A stretch of DNA of 64,000 bases from Calcarisporiella thermophila CBS 279.70 (Eukaryota > Fungi > Calcarisporiellomycota): NCBI RefSeq assembly GCF_041956535.1, contig NW_027192195.1:832785-896784 (forward strand), given 5' to 3'. Of the stretch, positions 12,352-58,300 are shown piece by piece; the stretch's first letter is position 1, and each line of letters begins with the position of its first letter. The translations under genes and the position numbers were made by a program. Under the pieces are notes generated by a model, which was not told the DNA's origin, did no database searches, and was given only the letters and a program-made list of their open reading frames with translations.

Positions 12352-12886
12352 CCTACAAAAACCCGCCTGGTGAAAACTGCTAGAAAACGTATAGGAGCAC
12401 GTAGAAAAGTAGGTAAAAAGTTTGTAAAAGTTTAGGGAATCGCAAACCTCCTCCATCTTTTCTACNNNNNNNNNNNNNNNNNNNNNNNNNNNNNNNNNNN
12501 NNNNNNNNNNNNNNNNNNNNNNNNNNNNNNNNNNNNNNNNNNNNNNNNNNNNNNNNNNNNNNNNNNNNNNNNNNNNNNNNNNNNNNNNNNNNNNNNNNNN
12601 NNNNNNNNNNNNNNNNNNNNNNNNNNNNNNNNNNNNNNNNNNNNNNNNNNNNNNNNNNNNNNNNNNNNNNNNNNNNNNNNNNNNNNNNNNNNNNNNNNNN
12701 NNNNNNNNNNNNNNNNNNNNNNNNNNNNNNNNNNNNNNNNNNNNNNNNNNNNNNNNNNNNNNNNNNNNNNNNNNNNNNNNNNNNNNNNNNNNNNNNNNNN
12801 NNNNNNNNNNTCGACCTAACCTCCTCCATCTTTCTACGTGCTCCTATACGTTTCTAGCAGTTTTCACCAGGCGGGTTTTTTGTAGG
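12352..12886. mobile_element. Inverted-repeat (MITE-like/hairpin) element spanning the assembly gap
   Basis: 12352-12409 is the reverse complement of 12830-12886 (about 57 bp), differing only in homopolymer lengths; no coding capacity is visible. Confidence 0.55.
12466..12810. other. Assembly gap (345 N)
   Basis: Run of N. Confidence 1.
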
Positions 12887-23793: not shown

Positions 23794-23948
23794 GTCGGGG
23801 AAACCTAGTTCCCACTAACAAAAATTATGGTATCGAGACACCCGTTAGAGTGTTCGCACCAGCAACTGCTAGTCGTTTGTGCAATGCTAGCAAAAGCTGA
23901 TGAAGCCAAAGCCGTCTTGACCACTTTGACTTCTACCCAGGTAAGTAT
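23794..23948 (-). ncRNA. U1: U1 spliceosomal snRNA
   Basis: The minus strand begins ATACTTACCTGG. It has an SL1 loop GGTCAAGACGG, an SL2 stem with loop CATTGCAC (U1A site), SL3, the Sm site ATAATTTTTG and a terminal hairpin GGGAAC...TTTCCC; about 155 nt. Confidence 0.96.
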
Positions 23949-23978
23949 GAGGAAACAACAGTGTGTTGAGCGAGCTCC

Positions 23979-24017
23979 TTTTTATACTACAGGATACTTT
24001 GAGCTTAGGCAAGTTCC
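23979..24017 (-). promoter_or_regulatory. U1 promoter: upstream element GGAACTTGCCTA plus TATA box
   Basis: TATAAAAA starts 38 nt upstream of the U1 5' end, and GGAACTTGCCTA starts 31 nt upstream of the TATA. Confidence 0.6.
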
Positions 24018-24203
24018 ATTCTGGAATTTATGGGATTCTTTTTTTTTTTTGCAAATATCAGCGAATCAGAACAAATTTAGATAGTTGAGTATATAATTTA
24101 CGCGTTTTAAGTATTTTTGGCTGTTCAACATGGTACAAAAATTAAATGATGGTTTATTGAAAAAAAAAGAAAGAATCTCATCCATACAGCATATTCTCCT
24201 AAA

Positions 24204-50967: not shown

Positions 50968-51798
50968 TCAAAAAGTCGACCAGGACCAATCCAGCGGAAC
51001 AGAAGGTGTGGGGTTCACATGAGGGTCCACTGCATATCATGATTTATATTGAGTTCAATGCAATATCCTCGTAGAAGGCAAAATAAGATAACTCACCCAT
51101 ATATCGATTCACGTTTATATTTTTTGGTTCCGGACTCTTTCTTTCTCCTTCTGCAACCATTCCATTTTCTTCCTCATCCAATTTTCTTTCATTAATATTA
51201 AGTTCACTGTCAACTAAAGATGTTGGCTTATCATCTGCCTGAAGATCTAGGTAGCATCGATCACATACGCGACTAAGCTGCCCGCGCGGGTGTGGTTGAG
51301 CGTGCTGGTCGAGGGGGAAATATTTTTTGCAGTGTCGAGAACAAAATATATCGCCGCAGCTATGCAAAAAGTATTGAAAATATATGTTATTCACGTTAGA
51401 GGGGGAATGTGATCTTGACAATGTTCTACCGTCGACAGTGATGCCGCCGCTCCAGCAGCCAAAAATGCACTCTACAATACGGCATCCCACATTTTCGCGC
51501 CTCTGAATCAGGCTAAAGTGTGGACTCTGATTTAACTCTAGCAGTATAAAATCTAGATTGCATTACTTGCCTTCCAATGTTCACGTGAGGGTGGTCCGAT
51601 GATTTCTTCATTTGTATTATCATTCATGGCCTCGGGATCAACACCTTTCAACTTACTCGAATCTCGGCTACCTTCACCTCCCTCATTTTCCTCTGCTATC
51701 ACAGGTCTATCGCTAATATTAGCGTTTAAAGTCCCATAAGTTGGGTGTTGGGGCCTTTGTTTACGAGTGAGGGAGTAGATGTCCGTGTGGTGATGCAT
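50968..51798 (-). CDS. Small FYVE zinc-finger protein
   Basis: WKPD..C...C...RRHHCRRCGDIFC..C...RVCDRC, ending in PLDWSWSTF*; 3 introns, one of them GC-AG. Confidence 0.9.
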
Positions 51799-52920: not shown

Positions 52921-53456
52921 CGGGGCGGAAAAGTCTCCGGTAGTCGATTAAAGATTAGGCTTGTGAAGAACGACTGGAACTATTTGTTCGATACTGAACA
53001 GTGTGTAAAACGGAAATAAAAGAGGTTAAAACAGAGAGATAAAAAAAGCGGACAAGAGGCGGAAAATAGGGGCGGAGAAACAATTCCATGGAAAATGAAG
53101 AGGTATGATCAAGGTGGCTAAACTGCCCTCAAAAGAAATTCCATTGGTGCGCGCTCGATTACTTGCGATCATTTGATGTTTATATTAGTTCCAAATAAAC
53201 CAAAAAGGCAAAGGACATTCTTTCCTCCAAACCCTTCGTATGAAAAAGTGCTAATTTATATAAGCAAAAAAAATAAAAATAAAATAAAATAGAGTAAGGG
53301 GGATTTTAGAACATTAGACAAAGGTCAATCAGTACACACAGTAAGAGTAAAATAGAAGTTCAGGCAGAAGTAGAAGAGAACGTACAACTAGCATGCATAT
53401 ATATAAGAGGCCAAGACAAAAGGGCTTTGGATAGGGAAGTTTCGCAGAAGCTCTTT

Positions 53457-54361
53457 TTAACTTGCTTCGTTCAACCGCATCAATGTCAATACCGCATCCA
53501 TGGTGTGTTCCTTGTGCTCCTTTTCATCCGTCCCAGCGACAGCGTCCGCCTCGGGATTTGCGGCTGTATTTTCTGCATTTGCGTCCATTTTCTCGGCGGC
53601 CCCATTACTGTTGTCTCCATTAGCTATACCGTTCCGCCCACGAGCACTTTCTGTTGCCAGAGCGGCGGCAAGAGCCGCAACCATCAACCGGTCATTCTTG
53701 CCAGCAACCTGAGCCAATTGATGCAAGCGTGCCATCAAGGCATCCTGATTCTCGGTACTTGCCACGTTTCCACTGGAGGCCGCCTCTCCGCCTTCGCCGC
53801 TGTTAGTGATTCTATCTCCAGAACCTTCATTGCCCTCGCGCAAAAGGCTTTTCAATATCATATGACTAAAGCCGGATCTCTCGCCCTTTCCGTCCTCAGC
53901 GCCGTTCATCATATTTCCACCGGCAGAGAGTTCGCCGACTGAAGTAGGTGTAAGAGATGGAATACCCGAGTGTTGCGGTGTGTGTTGTACAGCTCCCTCG
54001 ATTGCTTGCCGGCGCCTCTCTTTGTCTTGACGCTTACTACGCCGCTTAGAGAATTCGGTCTCGATCCAACGACGTTTTTCCTCTGTGTCTTCTTTCCCGA
54101 AGATCTTATTCGCTCGCTTATTAACCCTGCATCGCAGATCATTGTCCTTGTCTATAAATCGATGGTTGTCAGCGATCATCCTTGATCAAGATTGGGGCTC
54201 CAGGGAAAAAGAGAAAACTTACTTCTTTCTTCATTCAATTCCCTCCAGCGCTTTTTTCGCTCTCGATTCTCTTGTCGAATTTTCTCAATGTCTATAGGCC
54301 GTTTAGAGCCGGTTAGATGCTCGCTTGTGTTCATTGCTCCGTTCTGAGCGACTGGCACCAT
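53457..54361 (-). CDS. DUF3020-domain protein
   Basis: IRQENRERKKRWRELNEERN-KDNDLRCRVNKRANKIFG...W...EF.KRR; one intron. Confidence 0.8.
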
Positions 54362-54879
54362 CCCAGGGTGTGCGGTCCAAGATGAAAATGAAGCGAAAAT
54401 AAGCACTAGATTCAAAGAGCCTACTTGAAGAGCGTCCCCTTTCTAAAATGTGTAGTTCAAAGCCCTAGTAAAAATGGACGGGGAGATGAGATTCAGAGAG
54501 AGCCGCTGGGGGGGATGGCGGATTCGGGGGGAGGAAACTTACTCTTGTAAAAGGTTGAGATGCAGATACTCGATTTCTCTGGAAATGGATCGCAGGATAT
54601 TTATCAGAGAACAGCGGGGGAGAGAGCGGTGGGGGAAAATGCCCTCAAGGCAATATCAACTGGAGAAAAAGAGGAAGAAAAAAATCCTCGGTGGGCGCGA
54701 GAGAAAAAAAAACATCGCAGTCCAGCAGGGGACAGGATTTGTGACCGGTGATTGGTTTAGAAGTCACAAGCCAAAACTAATAGGAAATTGATAAATTGAA
54801 TAAATCAAAAAATGCGGAACTTCCTATTCCCTACTTGAGAGGCGCGTACAAATGGGCCGCAGCAACTCCACGGCGGTTA

Positions 54880-55276
54880 GAGGGAGCGATTCTTTCATTC
54901 CACCGACGCTGGCTGCCGTTAACCCATCGATACGGCATGGAAGCCCACCCACCTCCAGTAAGCTAAGCTGCTACTGACTGGAGCTGACCGCAGCGCAAAG
55001 CTAAACTCCAAAAGCAAATCTCATAGAATTCAGCGGGTTCCTTGATTCAACAGTGCGGACGGACTCGGATCAGGAGGGCGCCGTTCCACGTAGGAGCCGG
55101 AGAATTCAAGCGCGCTCTCTCCAGAGATCATTCAGAGGACGCCTTGCCTTCGTGCAGAGACTCGGAGTGGCTGTTAATCCGCTTCTCAACCTAAATCGGT
55201 GGCCAAATCTTACCGGGGACGGATGAATTTGGGCAGTCAAGGCTTTTCAACCCTTCTCGGGTTTCGAGCTCGTTTT
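54880..55276 (+). ncRNA. Candidate unidentified structured non-coding RNA
   Basis: GC-rich block with several stems and a long-range helix, preceded by a motif and TATA-like box spaced as in the U1 promoter; no family recognised. Confidence 0.35.
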
Positions 55277-55395
55277 CTAAGCTAATCATTCCCCGATCAC
55301 CGCCCGGCCTCTTATCTCTCTGTAATCATAACATATATCTTGTTTTACACCTTGTCATAAAATTAAAAAAGCATTCTGAACAATTTGTATGAGAG

Positions 55396-58300
55396 ATGTG
55401 TTCCAAATCGTTGCAAATCGCCAAAGAAATTGACACCGCCCGCTGTAATGGCGAGTGGGACGCCATCCCTGACTTGGTGCGGCGCTATTCGAAGCGTAAA
55501 TCAGCTGACACATGTAATTGAATATGTCCACCTATCCTTTACCTTCTAATGTACTTACCCCTTCATACTTTAGTCTTTTCGGATCTGATAACTTTAGAAC
55601 ACGAAATCGTCAATCAAATTCAATTGCATATCAAATCGCAGAATTTTACTTATGAGGGATGGGAGAAAGACGATCAACAGCATATATCTTTGACGCCCAG
55701 AGTTCCAGCTAACCTACTAAGAGAGGCTATTGAGAAATTAAAGAAAAAACTCAAATCGACAAAAAATGAAGAGCAAAAACATGTAATAGTTGTCTATATG
55801 CTATGTGAATTTTCTAAATTTCAAGGCTAATTTTTTTCGGCGACAGAGCTTGTTATTACTACTTTCAAGGGCATATTATGCGATAGGGAGCTGGAGGGAA
55901 ACGCGAGAATGTCTATCAGTGTCTCGGACAGGGGGGTTGAGTTTGAAGGGATATGATCTTGTATTGAAAGTGCAAGAGCTAGCAATGAAAGGTAGAAATG
56001 GGGAGTCTACTCAGTCGTATTGTATTTAGCTTATACTGGTTATATTTTGCAAGGAACTGCGTTTGAGATGATGAATGATCCTCTCAGAGCAACAGAGTGC
56101 TATGATGCCATTCCTGCTCTCCTTCAATACCCTTCTGACCCCATAGCATCCGATCAGCTTATGGCTTGGATTGAAGAGGGCTTGTATCGGTCCCCTTTTC
56201 TTTATCTTCGCATGGGAAATTCTACGGGTGCACTAGAGGCTTTTCGGACCTATTTTGAACATTCGGAAAATTGGCCTTTAACCTTCCGCATATATAAGCG
56301 CTTAGCGATATTGAGGCACTATGCCCGTAGTTTGGGAGATACTTATCGTACTGGAGAATATTGCCCACCTTCAGAAAATTTAAGGGTCCATCTACGATCA
56401 AAAATGAGCATGAAAGCTCGAACAGAGAAAGAGGACATTCATGAACTGGCACGAGTGGAATTCATTCGTGTGCATGACGTATATGCCAACCTGGTGTTTG
56501 CCTGCACTCCAGTTCCAAGGGCAGGCGAGATAAATGTGCAGGTGATGGAAATGGTGGATCGAGTTGCAAGCGACTGGGAGCTCCTTGGTAGAGGGTGTGA
56601 CGAGATGGAATTACGGCACGTGGTGGATATATTGTATCGGTCGACCGAGAAAGTATTTAATTCGCCAAGAGTGATGCGAAATCTTGCCCGGATGCTACAC
56701 CGCCTTGGAGAATTCTCAGATTGCATAAGAATAATGGATGTTTATTTAGCAGTAGCAGGGATGAGAGAAGTTGTATGCGGCGTCGGCGTTTGCATAGAGG
56801 AGGTGCATCTTCATGAAAGCAGTGAACCACCTCGCGAAGTGGTCAAAGTGCTCTTGTTGGGTTGCCATTTACTGGCCCACAAACTCATTCATGGGGAAAA
56901 GTGTCTCCAGTATGCAAAGAAGGCCTATGCATTATGCAAGGGAGAGGCATCTTTGAAGGACTTGAAAGAAAAAGTGCTGAGATATCTGGCCGCCGGATAC
57001 GGCATTCTTGCGAATAACTCGACAGATCCAGAGCAACGTTCCACTTTTAGACAGGAAGCAATTATAGCTTTAGAAGAAGCGATCAAAGCTGGTGGTAGTT
57101 GGCAGGCACAGTATCAGCTAGCATTGCAGCATGCAGAGGCAAGAGATATTCCCCTTGCAATTCAAGTAGTGCGAGAGGCTCTCTCCACACAGCCACACTG
57201 TATTCCTGCTTGGCATCTTTTAGTGTTACTCTTTTCTTGTTCCTGCCAGGATGACTTAGAAGGAGCACTACGGTTTTGCAATATTGCCCTCAGCGAAGCT
57301 GAAGCTCAGTTAGAAAGCACCGATATCGATGCATCGACAATATACGAAGTCGACCAGAGTCACATTGACATGGAGATATTTTCTTTGCGATTGACAGAGA
57401 CACTGCTTCTTAGTAAACTGCGTGGCCCTGCACAGACACTCCTTCATCTTCGTATACTCTTCGCACTCTATGCGCGAGTGTTCTCTTTCACAGACTCGAA
57501 TGCCCAAGCAGGGGAAAACCTGCTCAATAAGGGCGTGGCGGAAAATCTAACTGGGAAAAATCAATATCCTCAGTCTCAGCTCCCCACATCCCCCACAAAA
57601 ATTGATGCCCAAGCGAATGGCCAATTGCGAAATAGCGATCGTGGCGAGCACGCAAGTGCACGACTAAGCTTTAGTAAACTAAGTTCATTGGCAGGCCAAA
57701 AGAAGAAGAAAAAGGCAATGGACAATGCTGACAAGGCAGAATCGAATATGGCTCCAGGGAAAGAACGCCTTGATAACCGCCCTACTGCCCATTTTACTTC
57801 ATCAGATCCCTCTAGCCTACCTAGCGACTCTCGGAAATTTTCATCTCACTCCAACCCTTCCGAACGCAAAGAAGTCGAAGCAAATCGGTTATTGCGCGAA
57901 TACTCATGTGAAGTGCTAAGTCGGTTGTGGTTGATATCTGCGGAAGCCTTTCGGCGGCTAGAGAGAATGGACGAAGCACAAAAGGCGGTAGAAGAAGCAG
58001 CGAGATGCTTTTCGAGTGTAGGTGAGAGTGCAGACGTGTGGCACGAGTCCGGTAAACTTATGGCCGCTCAAAAAAATTATCCAATGGCAATAAAAGCCCT
58101 CCACAAAGCCTTGGCTCTGGATCCGAATCATGTTGGGACTAAAGTCTGCCTAGCGGAGGTTTATATAGCAATGTCACGAGAGAAAGAAACACACGGCATT
58201 CATGAACGAAAGTTTCCGGAAGATGTCAACAATCCAAAAGAAAAGGAGGAATTAGAAGAGAAAGCCGACGAGAAAAGTCGGAGAGGATTGAAGGTCAGCC

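What the first reader, a model, noticed from the sequence alone, without database searches (positions are those of the whole stretch)
54811..55300. Unidentified structured RNA candidate behind a U1-type promoter
Seen: between the divergent DUF3020 and YPP1 genes lies a 0.4 kb GC-rich block with no unspliced ORF of 60 aa or more. Upstream, GGAACTTCCTA (54816) sits 31 nt before TACAAAT (54847). The U1 gene in this same window has GGAACTTGCCTA 31 nt before TATAAAA. Applying the U1 offset puts the start near 54885. The block folds readily. A long-range helix pairs GAGGGAGCG-ATTCTTT (54880-54895) with GGAGAATT..CGCTCTCTC (55099-55121). Local hairpins include TGCCGT/ACGGCA, CTCCAGT/ACTGGAG, GAGTGG/CCGCTT and CTCG/CGAG. 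An Sm-like AATTTGG lies near 55226, with T4 runs at 55243 and 55273. I could not match it by eye to U2-U6, U11/U12, U3, SRP or RNase P/MRP. Inference: a novel snRNA-promoter-driven RNA. Size and enclosing helix are telomerase-RNA-like, but only TAACCC and AACCTAA are present, not a full TTAGGG template.
Basis: partly seen in the sequence, partly recalled or inferred. Interest (0 to 1): 0.8.

Follow-up and report, generated by a model that had tools for sequence, protein, structure and literature searches.

The report
GC-rich orphan unit, not an snRNA
The GC-rich 0.47 kb block upstream of YPP1 in Calcarisporiella thermophila is real and looks non-coding, but the public annotation already models it as a two-exon orphan gene. 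It lacks the promoter elements, stable fold and family matches that the true snRNA genes of this genome have.

Summary
The block (about 54835-55310) is the most GC-rich ORF-poor stretch in the 64 kb window: 0.55 against 0.34 +/- 0.05.

The interpretation mostly fails.
- Promoter: fifteen snRNA/snoRNA genes of this genome (U1, U2, U4, U5, U3, U12, U6) were examined. Fourteen carry a clear (A)TCCCAYA upstream element (U2c is degenerate). The thirteen U1, U2, U4, U5 and U3 genes carry TATAAA or TATATAAA. U12 and U6 have TTAAATA. The candidate has neither element. GGAACTT-CCTA occurs at only one snRNA gene (U1a) and is not enriched genome-wide.
- Fold: the block folds no better than shuffles (z +0.7). 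Real snRNAs here give z -1.2 to -5.3.
- Families: no Rfam family matches at E up to 10.
- Telomerase: the telomere repeat is TTAGG, so AACCTAA is a formal 7-nt template. Such 7-mers are expected 0.08 times per 450 nt, and the site lies too close to the 3' end.

GenBank already annotates a spliced 101-aa orphan protein here (VTP21DRAFT_9454). That ORF has no relatives, a weak codon-usage score and no confident fold.

Best reading: a small lineage-specific Pol II unit, probably non-coding or newly arisen. No RNA data or relatives could be reached, so transcription is untested.

A moderate similarity to the U5a promoter (P 0.002-0.09) remains unexplained.

The parts
54835..55310 (+). GC-rich, ORF-poor block, the body of the putative unit. 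GC is 0.55 overall.
   Evidence: It is the most GC-rich 400-nt window without a long open frame in the 64 kb (0.548 against 0.34 +/- 0.048). It is single copy in the genome.
54770..54830 (.). AT-rich trough upstream (GC 0.28), the likely promoter region. It holds GGAACTTCCTA at 54816-54826.
   Evidence: The best upstream-element score in 54650-54870 is only 4.3 bits.
54847..54853 (+). It overlaps the annotated ATG at 54852.
   Evidence: The 13 Pol II snRNA/U3 genes examined have TATAAA or TATATAAA instead.
54852..54957 (+). Exon 1 of the annotated orphan ORF VTP21DRAFT_9454 (GC 0.60).
54958..55026 (+). Annotated 69-nt intron (GTAAGC ... GCTAAAC ... CATAG). GC is 0.48 overall and 0.41 in the 3' half. 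It removes the only two in-frame stops.
55027..55226 (+). Exon 2 of the annotated ORF, including the TGA stop (GC 0.56).
   Evidence: (100% match to P0004).
55188..55194 (+). AACCTAA, 1.4 repeats of the C-strand of the TTAGG telomere. It is a formal telomerase-template-like 7-mer.
   Evidence: Such 7-mers are expected 0.077 times per 450 nt per strand.
55226..55232 (+). Sm-like AATTTGG. It overlaps the annotated stop codon.
   Evidence: It is weaker than the Sm sites of this genome's U1, U2, U4 and U5, which have four to six U.
55310..55395 (.). AT-rich trough downstream (GC 0.23-0.27). It is the likely terminator of the unit and core promoter of YPP1, whose ATG is at 55396.
23797..24044 (-). 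The U1 snRNA gene used for comparison, with its promoter. The upstream element AATCCCATAAA is at 24037, GGAACTTGCCTA at 24017 and TATAAAA at 23986.

Best explanation
The block is the body of a small (about 0.45-0.5 kb), single-copy, lineage-restricted transcription unit lying in tandem just upstream of YPP1. RNA polymerase II probably transcribes it as an mRNA-like, once-spliced transcript. The GenBank record of Calcarisporiella thermophila CBS 279.70 already models it as the two-exon orphan gene VTP21DRAFT_9454 (101 aa). The ORF lacks the marks of a conserved protein, so the product is more likely a non-coding or newly arisen, weakly coding transcript than a functional old protein. It is not an snRNA-type gene.

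Shown here: composition, boundaries, the annotated model, absence of snRNA promoter elements, no excess folding, no homologues.

Inferred: that it is transcribed, spliced and made by Pol II.
For: A discrete unit:
- A sharply bounded GC-rich body lies between two AT-rich troughs.
- GC dips inside the annotated intron: 0.60 / 0.48 / 0.56 for exon 1, intron and exon 2.
- The intron has canonical GTAAGC and YAG ends. Its 69-nt length is like the YPP1 introns, which total about 186 nt.
- The public model is identical to the exon structure I derived.

Not an snRNA-type gene:
- The upstream element scores 10-16 bits in 14 of 15 snRNA/snoRNA genes. The candidate's best is 4.3 bits, matched by 41% of random 220-nt windows.
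- No TATAAA lies between 54700 and 55400.
- The exact GGAACTT-CCTA pattern has 17 genome hits against 68 for the reversed control. None but U1a lies beside an Rfam RNA.
- Fold z is +0.73, against -1.2 to -5.3 for eight real snRNAs.
- Rfam finds nothing real at E up to 10. There is no tRNA and no C-box.

Weak as a protein:
- The in-frame codon score is 0.02. Real ORFs, including the GC-rich DUF3020 hold-out at 0.25, score 0.05-0.33. An antisense shadow ORF scores -0.02.
- GC by codon position is flat at .58/.58/.57, against about .57/.41/.43 in real genes.
- No Pfam match in any frame.
- In 1.84 billion representative proteins, the only hits are two tandem-repeat junk translations whose E-values are inflated by repetition.
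- ESM Atlas model pLDDT is 0.40 and pTM 0.17. The genome holds no paralogue.
Against: - No transcript evidence could be reached. No RNA run was listed and the genome's own records are left out of the contig look-up.
- The annotation pipeline, SnowyOwl, accepts short orphan models if they contain an intron, even at low read coverage (PMC4084796; PMC11393059). The model therefore does not prove transcription or splicing.
- A spliced ORF of 101 codons or more arises in 3-13% of shuffles of the block.
- The upstream region is more similar to the U5a promoter than chance predicts (P 0.002-0.09). If the proposed TACAAAT were the TATA box, transcription would start after the annotated ATG.
- A GC-rich non-coding body in an AT-rich thermophile is also what a structural RNA would look like.
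Confidence: 0.5

Rival explanations
1. One reading: a novel Sm-class, snRNA-promoter-driven structured RNA of about 350-460 nt, starting near 54885. The gene finder then mis-annotated it as an orphan protein.
For: - The body is GC-rich and non-coding-looking in an AT-rich genome, as for U1b, U2 and U4 (GC 0.53-0.57).
- The upstream region aligns collinearly over 48 nt with the U5a promoter. GGAACTTCCT..CCTAC lies 12 nt before TACAAAT where U5a has GAAATTCCT..CCTAC 10 nt before TATAAAT. P is 0.002-0.09 for the best of nine promoters against shuffles.
- A GRAAYTT(N)CC-like middle element also appears in U1a and U1b.
- An AAUUUGG Sm-like site is present.
Against: - The (A)TCCCAYA element is absent: 4.3 bits against 10-16.
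- There is no TATAAA.
- The A-rich 3' box seen 10-30 nt after every Pol II snRNA/U3 gene is missing. The first comparable A-run is about 130 nt past the Sm-like site.
- Fold z is +0.73, and no 150-nt window on the plus strand is below -1.4.
- No Rfam hit.
- The similarity to the U1a promoter itself is ordinary: 8-13% of windows score as well.
Confidence: 0.1
2. The block is, or contains, the telomerase RNA. AACCUAA (55188-55194) would template the TTAGG repeat, and the hairpin at 55165-55184 would act as the template boundary.
For: - The telomeres of this genome are TTAGG arrays at four contig ends, so AACCUAA is a formally sufficient 1.4-repeat template.
- A 6-bp hairpin ends 3 nt upstream of it, and an Sm-like site follows it.
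Against: - Telomere-type 7-mers occur 22 times in this 64 kb window, or 0.077 per 450 nt per strand. Longer 8-9-mers occur elsewhere, one of them inside the YPP1 coding sequence.
- Only 31 nt separate the template from the Sm-like site, and about 200 nt separate it from the YPP1 ATG. Known fungal and vertebrate telomerase RNAs place the pseudoknot and three-way junction 3' of the template (my knowledge of the family), and there is no room for them here.
- No telomerase-RNA family of Rfam matches.
- There is no fold signal.
- Other first-stage readers flagged two other, longer candidates elsewhere in this genome (untested).
Confidence: 0.02
3. A genuine small protein gene, as annotated: a 101-aa, Arg/Ser-rich, lineage-specific protein with an MGxxxS start that could be N-myristoylated.
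For: - An ATG-to-stop ORF of 101 codons opened by one canonical intron arises in only 3% of shuffles under strict splice signals.
- The GC dip coincides with the intron.
- GenBank and UniRef carry the model.
Against: - Codon score and codon-position GC look non-coding.
- The composition is what random translation of GC-rich DNA gives: R 14, S 13, K 1, E 1.
- No homologue, domain, paralogue or confident fold.
- The GC-rich block runs 85 nt past the stop codon.
Confidence: 0.15
4. Not a unit of its own. The block would be an unusually GC-rich upstream regulatory region or long 5' leader of YPP1, or a decayed relic of a former exon.
For: - It lies 170 nt upstream of the YPP1 ATG on the same strand.
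- SnowyOwl's authors note that many short models beside longer genes are non-functional ORFs in UTRs.
- There is no independent evidence of transcription.
Against: - A 90-nt AT-rich trough (GC 0.23-0.27) containing ATATAT separates the block from the YPP1 ATG. It looks like YPP1's own core promoter.
- A leader starting at the block would carry several upstream ATGs.
- No frame matches any protein family, so there is no sign of a relic.
Confidence: 0.2

Closest known systems
Orphan (taxonomically restricted or de novo) genes and short spliced lncRNAs of fungi, as annotated here: VTP21DRAFT_9454
   Same: Single copy, short and with one canonical intron. No homologue in 1.84 billion representative proteins, no domain, a low-confidence predicted fold, and codon statistics like non-coding sequence.
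   Different: The body is far more GC-rich than other non-coding DNA in the window. Its upstream region resembles one snRNA promoter (U5a) more than chance predicts.
snRNA/snoRNA genes of this genome with a plant-like upstream element plus TATA promoter (U1, U2, U4, U5, U3, U12, U6)
   Same: A GC-rich body between AT-rich flanks. A GGAAYTT-CC-like element about 30 nt before a TATA-like heptamer, as in U1a and U5a. An AAUUUGG Sm-like site.
   Different: No (A)TCCCAYA element, TACAAAT instead of TATAAA, no nearby A-rich 3' box, no excess folding stability, about twice to four times the length of the snRNAs found here, and no Rfam match.
Fungal telomerase RNAs (Pol II transcripts with an Sm site, such as TLC1, TER1 and the Neurospora telomerase RNA)
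   Same: A possible 7-nt template for the organism's TTAGG repeat, a hairpin just upstream of it, and an Sm-like site downstream.
   Different: The template-like 7-mer is at chance level and lies 31 nt from the Sm-like site. There is no room for a pseudoknot or three-way junction. The unit is much shorter than known fungal telomerase RNAs.

Membership tests
snRNA-type promoter of this genome (upstream element + TATA) | The upstream element (A)TCCCAYA, about 29-52 nt upstream of the TATA box | tested here: not met
   A weight matrix built from 15 genes scores 10.0-16.1 bits in 14 of them. The candidate's best site in 54650-54870 scores 4.3 bits, and 41% of random 220-nt windows do as well. No CCCAYA lies in 54700-55400.
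snRNA-type promoter of this genome (upstream element + TATA) | A TATAAA box about 34-46 nt before +1 | tested here: not met
   The 13 Pol II snRNA/U3 genes have TATAAA or TATATAAA. The candidate has TACAAAT, and no TATAAA lies in 54700-55400.
   There are 17 genome hits against 68 for the reversed control. Only U1a is an snRNA gene, and the other 15 loci hold no Rfam RNA except an rRNA fragment. Looser GRAAYTT-CC forms occur in U1b and U5a.
snRNA-type promoter of this genome (upstream element + TATA) | Overall promoter similarity beyond chance | tested here: inconclusive
   Against U1a, 8-13% of windows score as well. Against U5a the candidate is in the top 0.02-0.14%. The best-of-nine statistic against shuffles gives P 0.002-0.09, depending on scoring.
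snRNA-type gene | An A-rich 3' box (A-run, then G and purines) 10-30 nt after the RNA end | tested here: not met
   It is present after all 13 Pol II genes examined. After the Sm-like site, the first comparable A-run is at about 55364, 130 nt away and just before the YPP1 ATG.
Sm-class snRNA | An Sm site RAU(3-6)GR flanked by stem-loops | tested here: inconclusive
   AAUUUGG is present at 55226. My estimate is about 0.15 such sites expected per 450 nt. Real Sm sites here have four to six U.
Sm-class snRNA or compact structured RNA | Folding energy clearly below shuffled controls | tested here: not met
   z is +0.73 on the plus strand and +0.23 on the minus strand for 411 nt. Plus-strand 150-nt windows range from -1.4 to +1.5. 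Eight real snRNAs give -1.2 to -5.3.
Any Rfam 15 family (U1-U6, U11/U12, U4atac/U6atac, U3, SRP, RNase P/MRP, telomerase RNAs) | A covariance-model match | tested here: not met
   Only two chance-level hits at E 6-7 in 54500-55500. The gathering-threshold scan of the whole window finds only U1.
Telomerase RNA | A template complementary to more than one telomere repeat | tested here: inconclusive
   The telomere repeat is TTAGG. AACCUAA is 1.4 repeats, but 0.077 such 7-mers are expected per 450 nt per strand.
Telomerase RNA | A pseudoknot and three-way junction 3' of the template, within a core-enclosing helix | tested here: not met
   31 nt separate the template from the Sm-like site, and about 200 nt separate it from the YPP1 ATG. 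The proposed enclosing helix (54880/55113) closes upstream of the template and is not in the minimum-free-energy fold.
Telomerase RNA | Association with TERT and templating of telomere repeats | not testable with these tools
   This needs RNA immunoprecipitation or template mutagenesis.
Protein-coding gene | An open reading frame with canonical splice sites | tested here: met
   101 aa from 54852-54957 plus 55027-55226, identical to P0004. An ORF this long arises in 3-13% of shuffles.
Protein-coding gene | Codon bias and codon-position periodicity like the genome's genes | tested here: not met
   The score is 0.02, against 0.158 +/- 0.039 for training windows and 0.05-0.33 for most hold-outs. 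GC by position is flat. Two presumably real hold-outs also score low (0.02 and 0.05), so the test is not absolute.
Protein-coding gene | Homologues, a domain or a confident fold | tested here: not met

The most novel reading that the evidence does not exclude
The block encodes a lineage-specific, Pol II-transcribed, Sm-binding non-coding RNA of about 350-460 nt. Its promoter would have descended from a U5-type snRNA promoter and lost the upstream element. It would now be mis-annotated as an orphan protein. In the most extreme version it is an unusually small telomerase RNA for a TTAGG-telomere fungus.
Probability: 0.1. Interest if true: 0.6.

Novelty: already known. Interest (0 to 1): 0.2.

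Why it matters
As it stands the finding matters little. The locus is already in GenBank as a hypothetical protein, and nothing here shows a new RNA class.

Two things are useful. First, the orphan model VTP21DRAFT_9454 is probably not a conventional protein and needs RNA and peptide evidence. Second, the control work gives a clear, testable definition of snRNA-type promoters in this isolated fungal lineage: (A)TCCCAYA plus TATA plus an A-rich 3' box. That definition can be used to screen other RNA candidates in the genome, including the two telomerase-RNA candidates flagged elsewhere. The TTAGG telomere repeat sets what their template must be.

Tried and rejected
- RNA evidence: no RNA run was listed for 53400-57400, so read laying could not be used.
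- Synteny and covariation: the nearest YPP1 homologue is 28% identical (Cokeromyces). No relative turned up in metagenome contigs. The contig look-up for P0001 returned nothing. No alignment of relatives could be built.
- Big HMMER search of the annotated protein: two hits with good E-values (2e-25 and 1e-12). Both are translations of tandem satellite repeats, matched 19 and 7 times at 33-46% identity over about 40 residues. I rejected them as inflated chance matches.
- Genome-wide pattern TCCCAYAA-N28-50-TATAWA: 41 hits against 101 for the control. Beyond the known snRNA genes none holds an Rfam RNA, and none has a telomere-type 8-mer within 1.5 kb downstream. A three-copy hit is a repeat element. 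A GC-rich stretch after one hit (L057) looks like a gene on the other strand.
- Other RNA classes: no tRNA or SINE, no box C/D snoRNA because there is no C-box, and bacterial-type promoter and terminator sites are at chance level.
- CpG island: observed/expected CpG is 0.98, unremarkable.
- Pfam on every stop-free frame of 43 aa or more on both strands: only a sub-threshold 14-residue Stealth_CR1 match.
- Spliced model: it was searched exon by exon by reference. No typed joined sequence was sent to any search tool. The full-length searches used the database's own record P0004. Exons were joined only inside scripts, for codon statistics.

Full report
**Organism and setting.** The large exon of the downstream gene is 100% identical to VTP21DRAFT_9455 of Calcarisporiella thermophila. 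The genome is that of strain CBS 279.70, JAZGQU000000000, annotated with SnowyOwl (PMC11393059). The window is contig 5, 832785-896784, of a 28 Mb assembly. A DUF3020/SPP41 ORF lies at 53460-54179 on the minus strand. A TPR protein with a weak TTC7_N match (Ypp1-like) has its annotated ATG at 55396. The lineage is isolated: the next best YPP1 homologue is 28% identical.

**The observation.** The U1 gene (23797-23948, minus strand) does have GGAACTTGCCTA 31 nt before TATAAAA.

The block is a real compositional outlier. Among 400-nt windows with no stop-free frame of 80 codons or more, those over 54801-54951 have GC 0.54-0.55. The mean is 0.34 +/- 0.048, and the next best elsewhere is 0.44. A finer profile puts the body at about 54835-55310, between AT-rich troughs at 54770-54830 (GC 0.28) and 55310-55400 (GC 0.23-0.27). 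The block is single copy.

**Is it behind a U1-type promoter?** I collected 15 snRNA/snoRNA genes of this genome with Rfam models: U1 x2, U2 x3, U4, U5 x3, U3 x4, U12 and U6. The U12 hit is below the curated cut-off.

Their promoters share three features.
- An upstream element, (A)TCCCAYA. It resembles the plant snRNA upstream element described in PMC545797.
- A TATAAA or TATATAAA box in the 13 U1, U2, U4, U5 and U3 genes, 29-54 nt after the element and about 34-46 nt before +1. U12 and U6 have TTAAATA instead.
- An A-rich purine box 10-30 nt after the 3' end, again in those 13 Pol II genes.

A weight matrix of the upstream element scores 10.0-16.1 bits in 14 of the 15 genes. The candidate's best site in 54650-54870 scores 4.3 bits, and 41% of random 220-nt windows reach that. 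No CCCAYA and no TATAAA lies anywhere in 54700-55400.

Apart from U1a, no hit lies beside a known RNA.

The alignment of the candidate's upstream 110 nt to the U1a promoter is ordinary: 8-13% of windows score as well.

One thing does stand out. The alignment to the U5a promoter is collinear over 48 nt and ranks in the top 0.02-0.14% of windows. As the best of nine promoters against dinucleotide shuffles, it gives P 0.002-0.09, depending on scoring. In that alignment the CCCAC core of the U5a element faces ATCAA in the candidate. A shared middle element (GRAAYTT-CC ... CCTAC) may therefore be real, but the parts common to nearly all snRNA promoters are missing.

**Is it a structured RNA?**
- The 411-nt stretch 54880-55290 folds at -124 kcal/mol against -128.4 +/- 6.1 for shuffles (z +0.73). 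The minus strand gives z +0.23.
- Sliding 150-nt windows on the plus strand give z from -1.4 to +1.5. Eight real snRNAs of the same genome give -1.2 to -5.3, seven of them below -2.8.
- The minimum-free-energy fold does not contain the proposed long-range helix.
- By simple counting, helices of that size and an RAU(3-6)GR site are expected by chance in 450 nt. This estimate is my own arithmetic, not a tool result.
- Rfam 15 finds nothing in 54500-55500 at E up to 10 except two chance hits.
- There is no tRNA-like element and no C-box.

**Telomerase RNA?** Contig ends show the telomere repeat is TTAGG. (CCTAA)n arrays lie at the 5' ends of contigs 10 and 13, a short one at the 5' end of contig 3, and (TTAGG)n at the 3' end of contig 4. 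TAACCC is therefore irrelevant, and AACCTAA (55188) becomes a formal 1.4-repeat template.

Three points count against the reading.
- The 64 kb window holds 22 such 7-mers, or 0.077 per 450 nt per strand. Longer 8-9-mers occur elsewhere, one of them inside the YPP1 coding sequence.
- The site is 31 nt from the Sm-like heptamer and about 200 nt from the YPP1 ATG. That leaves no room for the pseudoknot and three-way junction that follow the template in known fungal and vertebrate telomerase RNAs (family knowledge, not tested here).
- Other first-stage readers flagged two longer candidates elsewhere in this genome. I did not test them.

**What the public record says.** Searching the second exon by reference returned a 100% match to a 101-aa protein, VTP21DRAFT_9454 (P0004). 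Its sequence equals exon 54852-54957 plus exon 55027-55226, with a 69-nt GTAAGC...CATAG intron between them. The intron removes the only two stops in that frame. GC dips within it: 0.60, 0.48 and 0.56 for exon 1, intron and exon 2.

SnowyOwl accepts short models without homology if they contain an intron. It bypasses read-based scoring when coverage is low (PMC4084796). The model is therefore not proof of transcription.

**Is the ORF a protein?**
- The in-frame codon log-likelihood is 0.02 (-0.02 with the stop codon). Windows of real genes give 0.158 +/- 0.039.
- ORFs held out of training score 0.05-0.33, including the equally GC-rich DUF3020 ORF at 0.25. An antisense shadow ORF scores -0.02. 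Two presumably real hold-outs also score low, so the test is not absolute.
- GC by codon position is flat at .58/.58/.57, against about .57/.41/.43 in real genes. The composition (R 14, S 13, K 1, E 1) is what GC-rich non-coding DNA gives when translated.
- There is no Pfam match in any frame and no paralogue in the genome.
- The ESM Atlas model has pLDDT 0.40.
- The exhaustive HMMER search of 1.84 billion representatives returned only two junk tandem-repeat translations, with E-values inflated by 19 and 7 repeated weak matches.
- A spliced ORF of at least 101 codons appears in 3% (strict splice signals) to 13% (any GT..AG) of shuffles of the block. Its length is only marginal evidence.

**Conclusion.** The block is a discrete, single-copy, GC-rich unit that is neither a recognisable structured RNA nor a convincing protein. 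The best reading (about 0.5) is a small lineage-specific Pol II unit that is already annotated, probably non-coding or newly arisen.

The rivals are a leader, regulatory region or relic of YPP1 (0.2), a genuine small protein (0.15), a novel Sm-class RNA (0.1) and telomerase RNA (0.02).

No RNA run could be listed and no relatives were reachable. Transcription, RNA ends and covariation therefore remain untested.

**Handling note.** The spliced model was searched exon by exon by reference. No typed joined sequence was sent to a search tool.

Noticed in passing
G000 contig ends: C10:1-90, C13:1-75, C3:1-10 and C4:1346477-1346566 (L032, L085, L025, L077): The telomere repeat of this fungus is the five-base TTAGG (arthropod type), not TTAGGG. 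Arrays are in the correct orientation at four contig ends. This fixes what a telomerase RNA template must look like in this genome.
   Followed up: partly
L001-L003, L036-L041 and L094-L099 (U2, U4, U5, U1, U3, U12 and U6 loci): Fourteen of the 15 snRNA/snoRNA genes found share a clear plant-like upstream element, (A)TCCCAYA (U2c is degenerate). The U1, U2, U4, U5 and U3 genes have TATAAA or TATATAAA 29-54 nt downstream of it, plus an A-rich purine 3' box. U12 and U6 have TTAAATA. Together with the scan's notes of SNAPC3 and SNAPC4 homologues, this suggests SNAPc-type snRNA transcription in this fungus.
   Followed up: partly
L001, L002 and L003 (three U2 genes), about 15 nt upstream of TATAAA: All three U2 promoters carry TAACCTAACCTA, which is 2.4 copies of the telomere C-strand repeat. 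This suggests a telomere-repeat-binding Myb factor acts at U2 promoters. U1 and U4 carry single CCTAAG or GCTAAG copies.
   Followed up: partly
G000:C1:926673-926772 (-), L098: A U12 snRNA candidate scores 44.4 bits, below the Rfam cut-off of 53. It has a perfect ATCCCATAT upstream element. That fits the U12-type intron another reader noted in this window.
   Followed up: no
G000:C9:17699, C16:291590 and C29:133378 (L058, L064): A three-copy repeat begins with TCCCATAAATTCGGGG and holds ATATATA about 50 nt on. The copies diverge after about 150 nt. There is no Rfam match, and it is probably the end of a mobile element.
   Followed up: partly
window 51483-51575 (+): A good upstream-element match (CATCCCACATT, 13.7 bits) is followed 52 nt later by TATAAAA. 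It lies inside the stretch where another reader placed an intron of the FYVE gene. It may be chance.
   Followed up: no
window 12466-12810, and L001 1250-1443: Runs of N, which are stretches withheld by the operators. I did not work on them.
   Followed up: no
P0005 and P0006 (hits): Two 1300-aa 'proteins' in the public library are translations of tandem satellite repeats (52-aa and about 40-aa units). They gave misleadingly strong E-values against a 101-aa query because many weak repeats were summed.
   Followed up: yes
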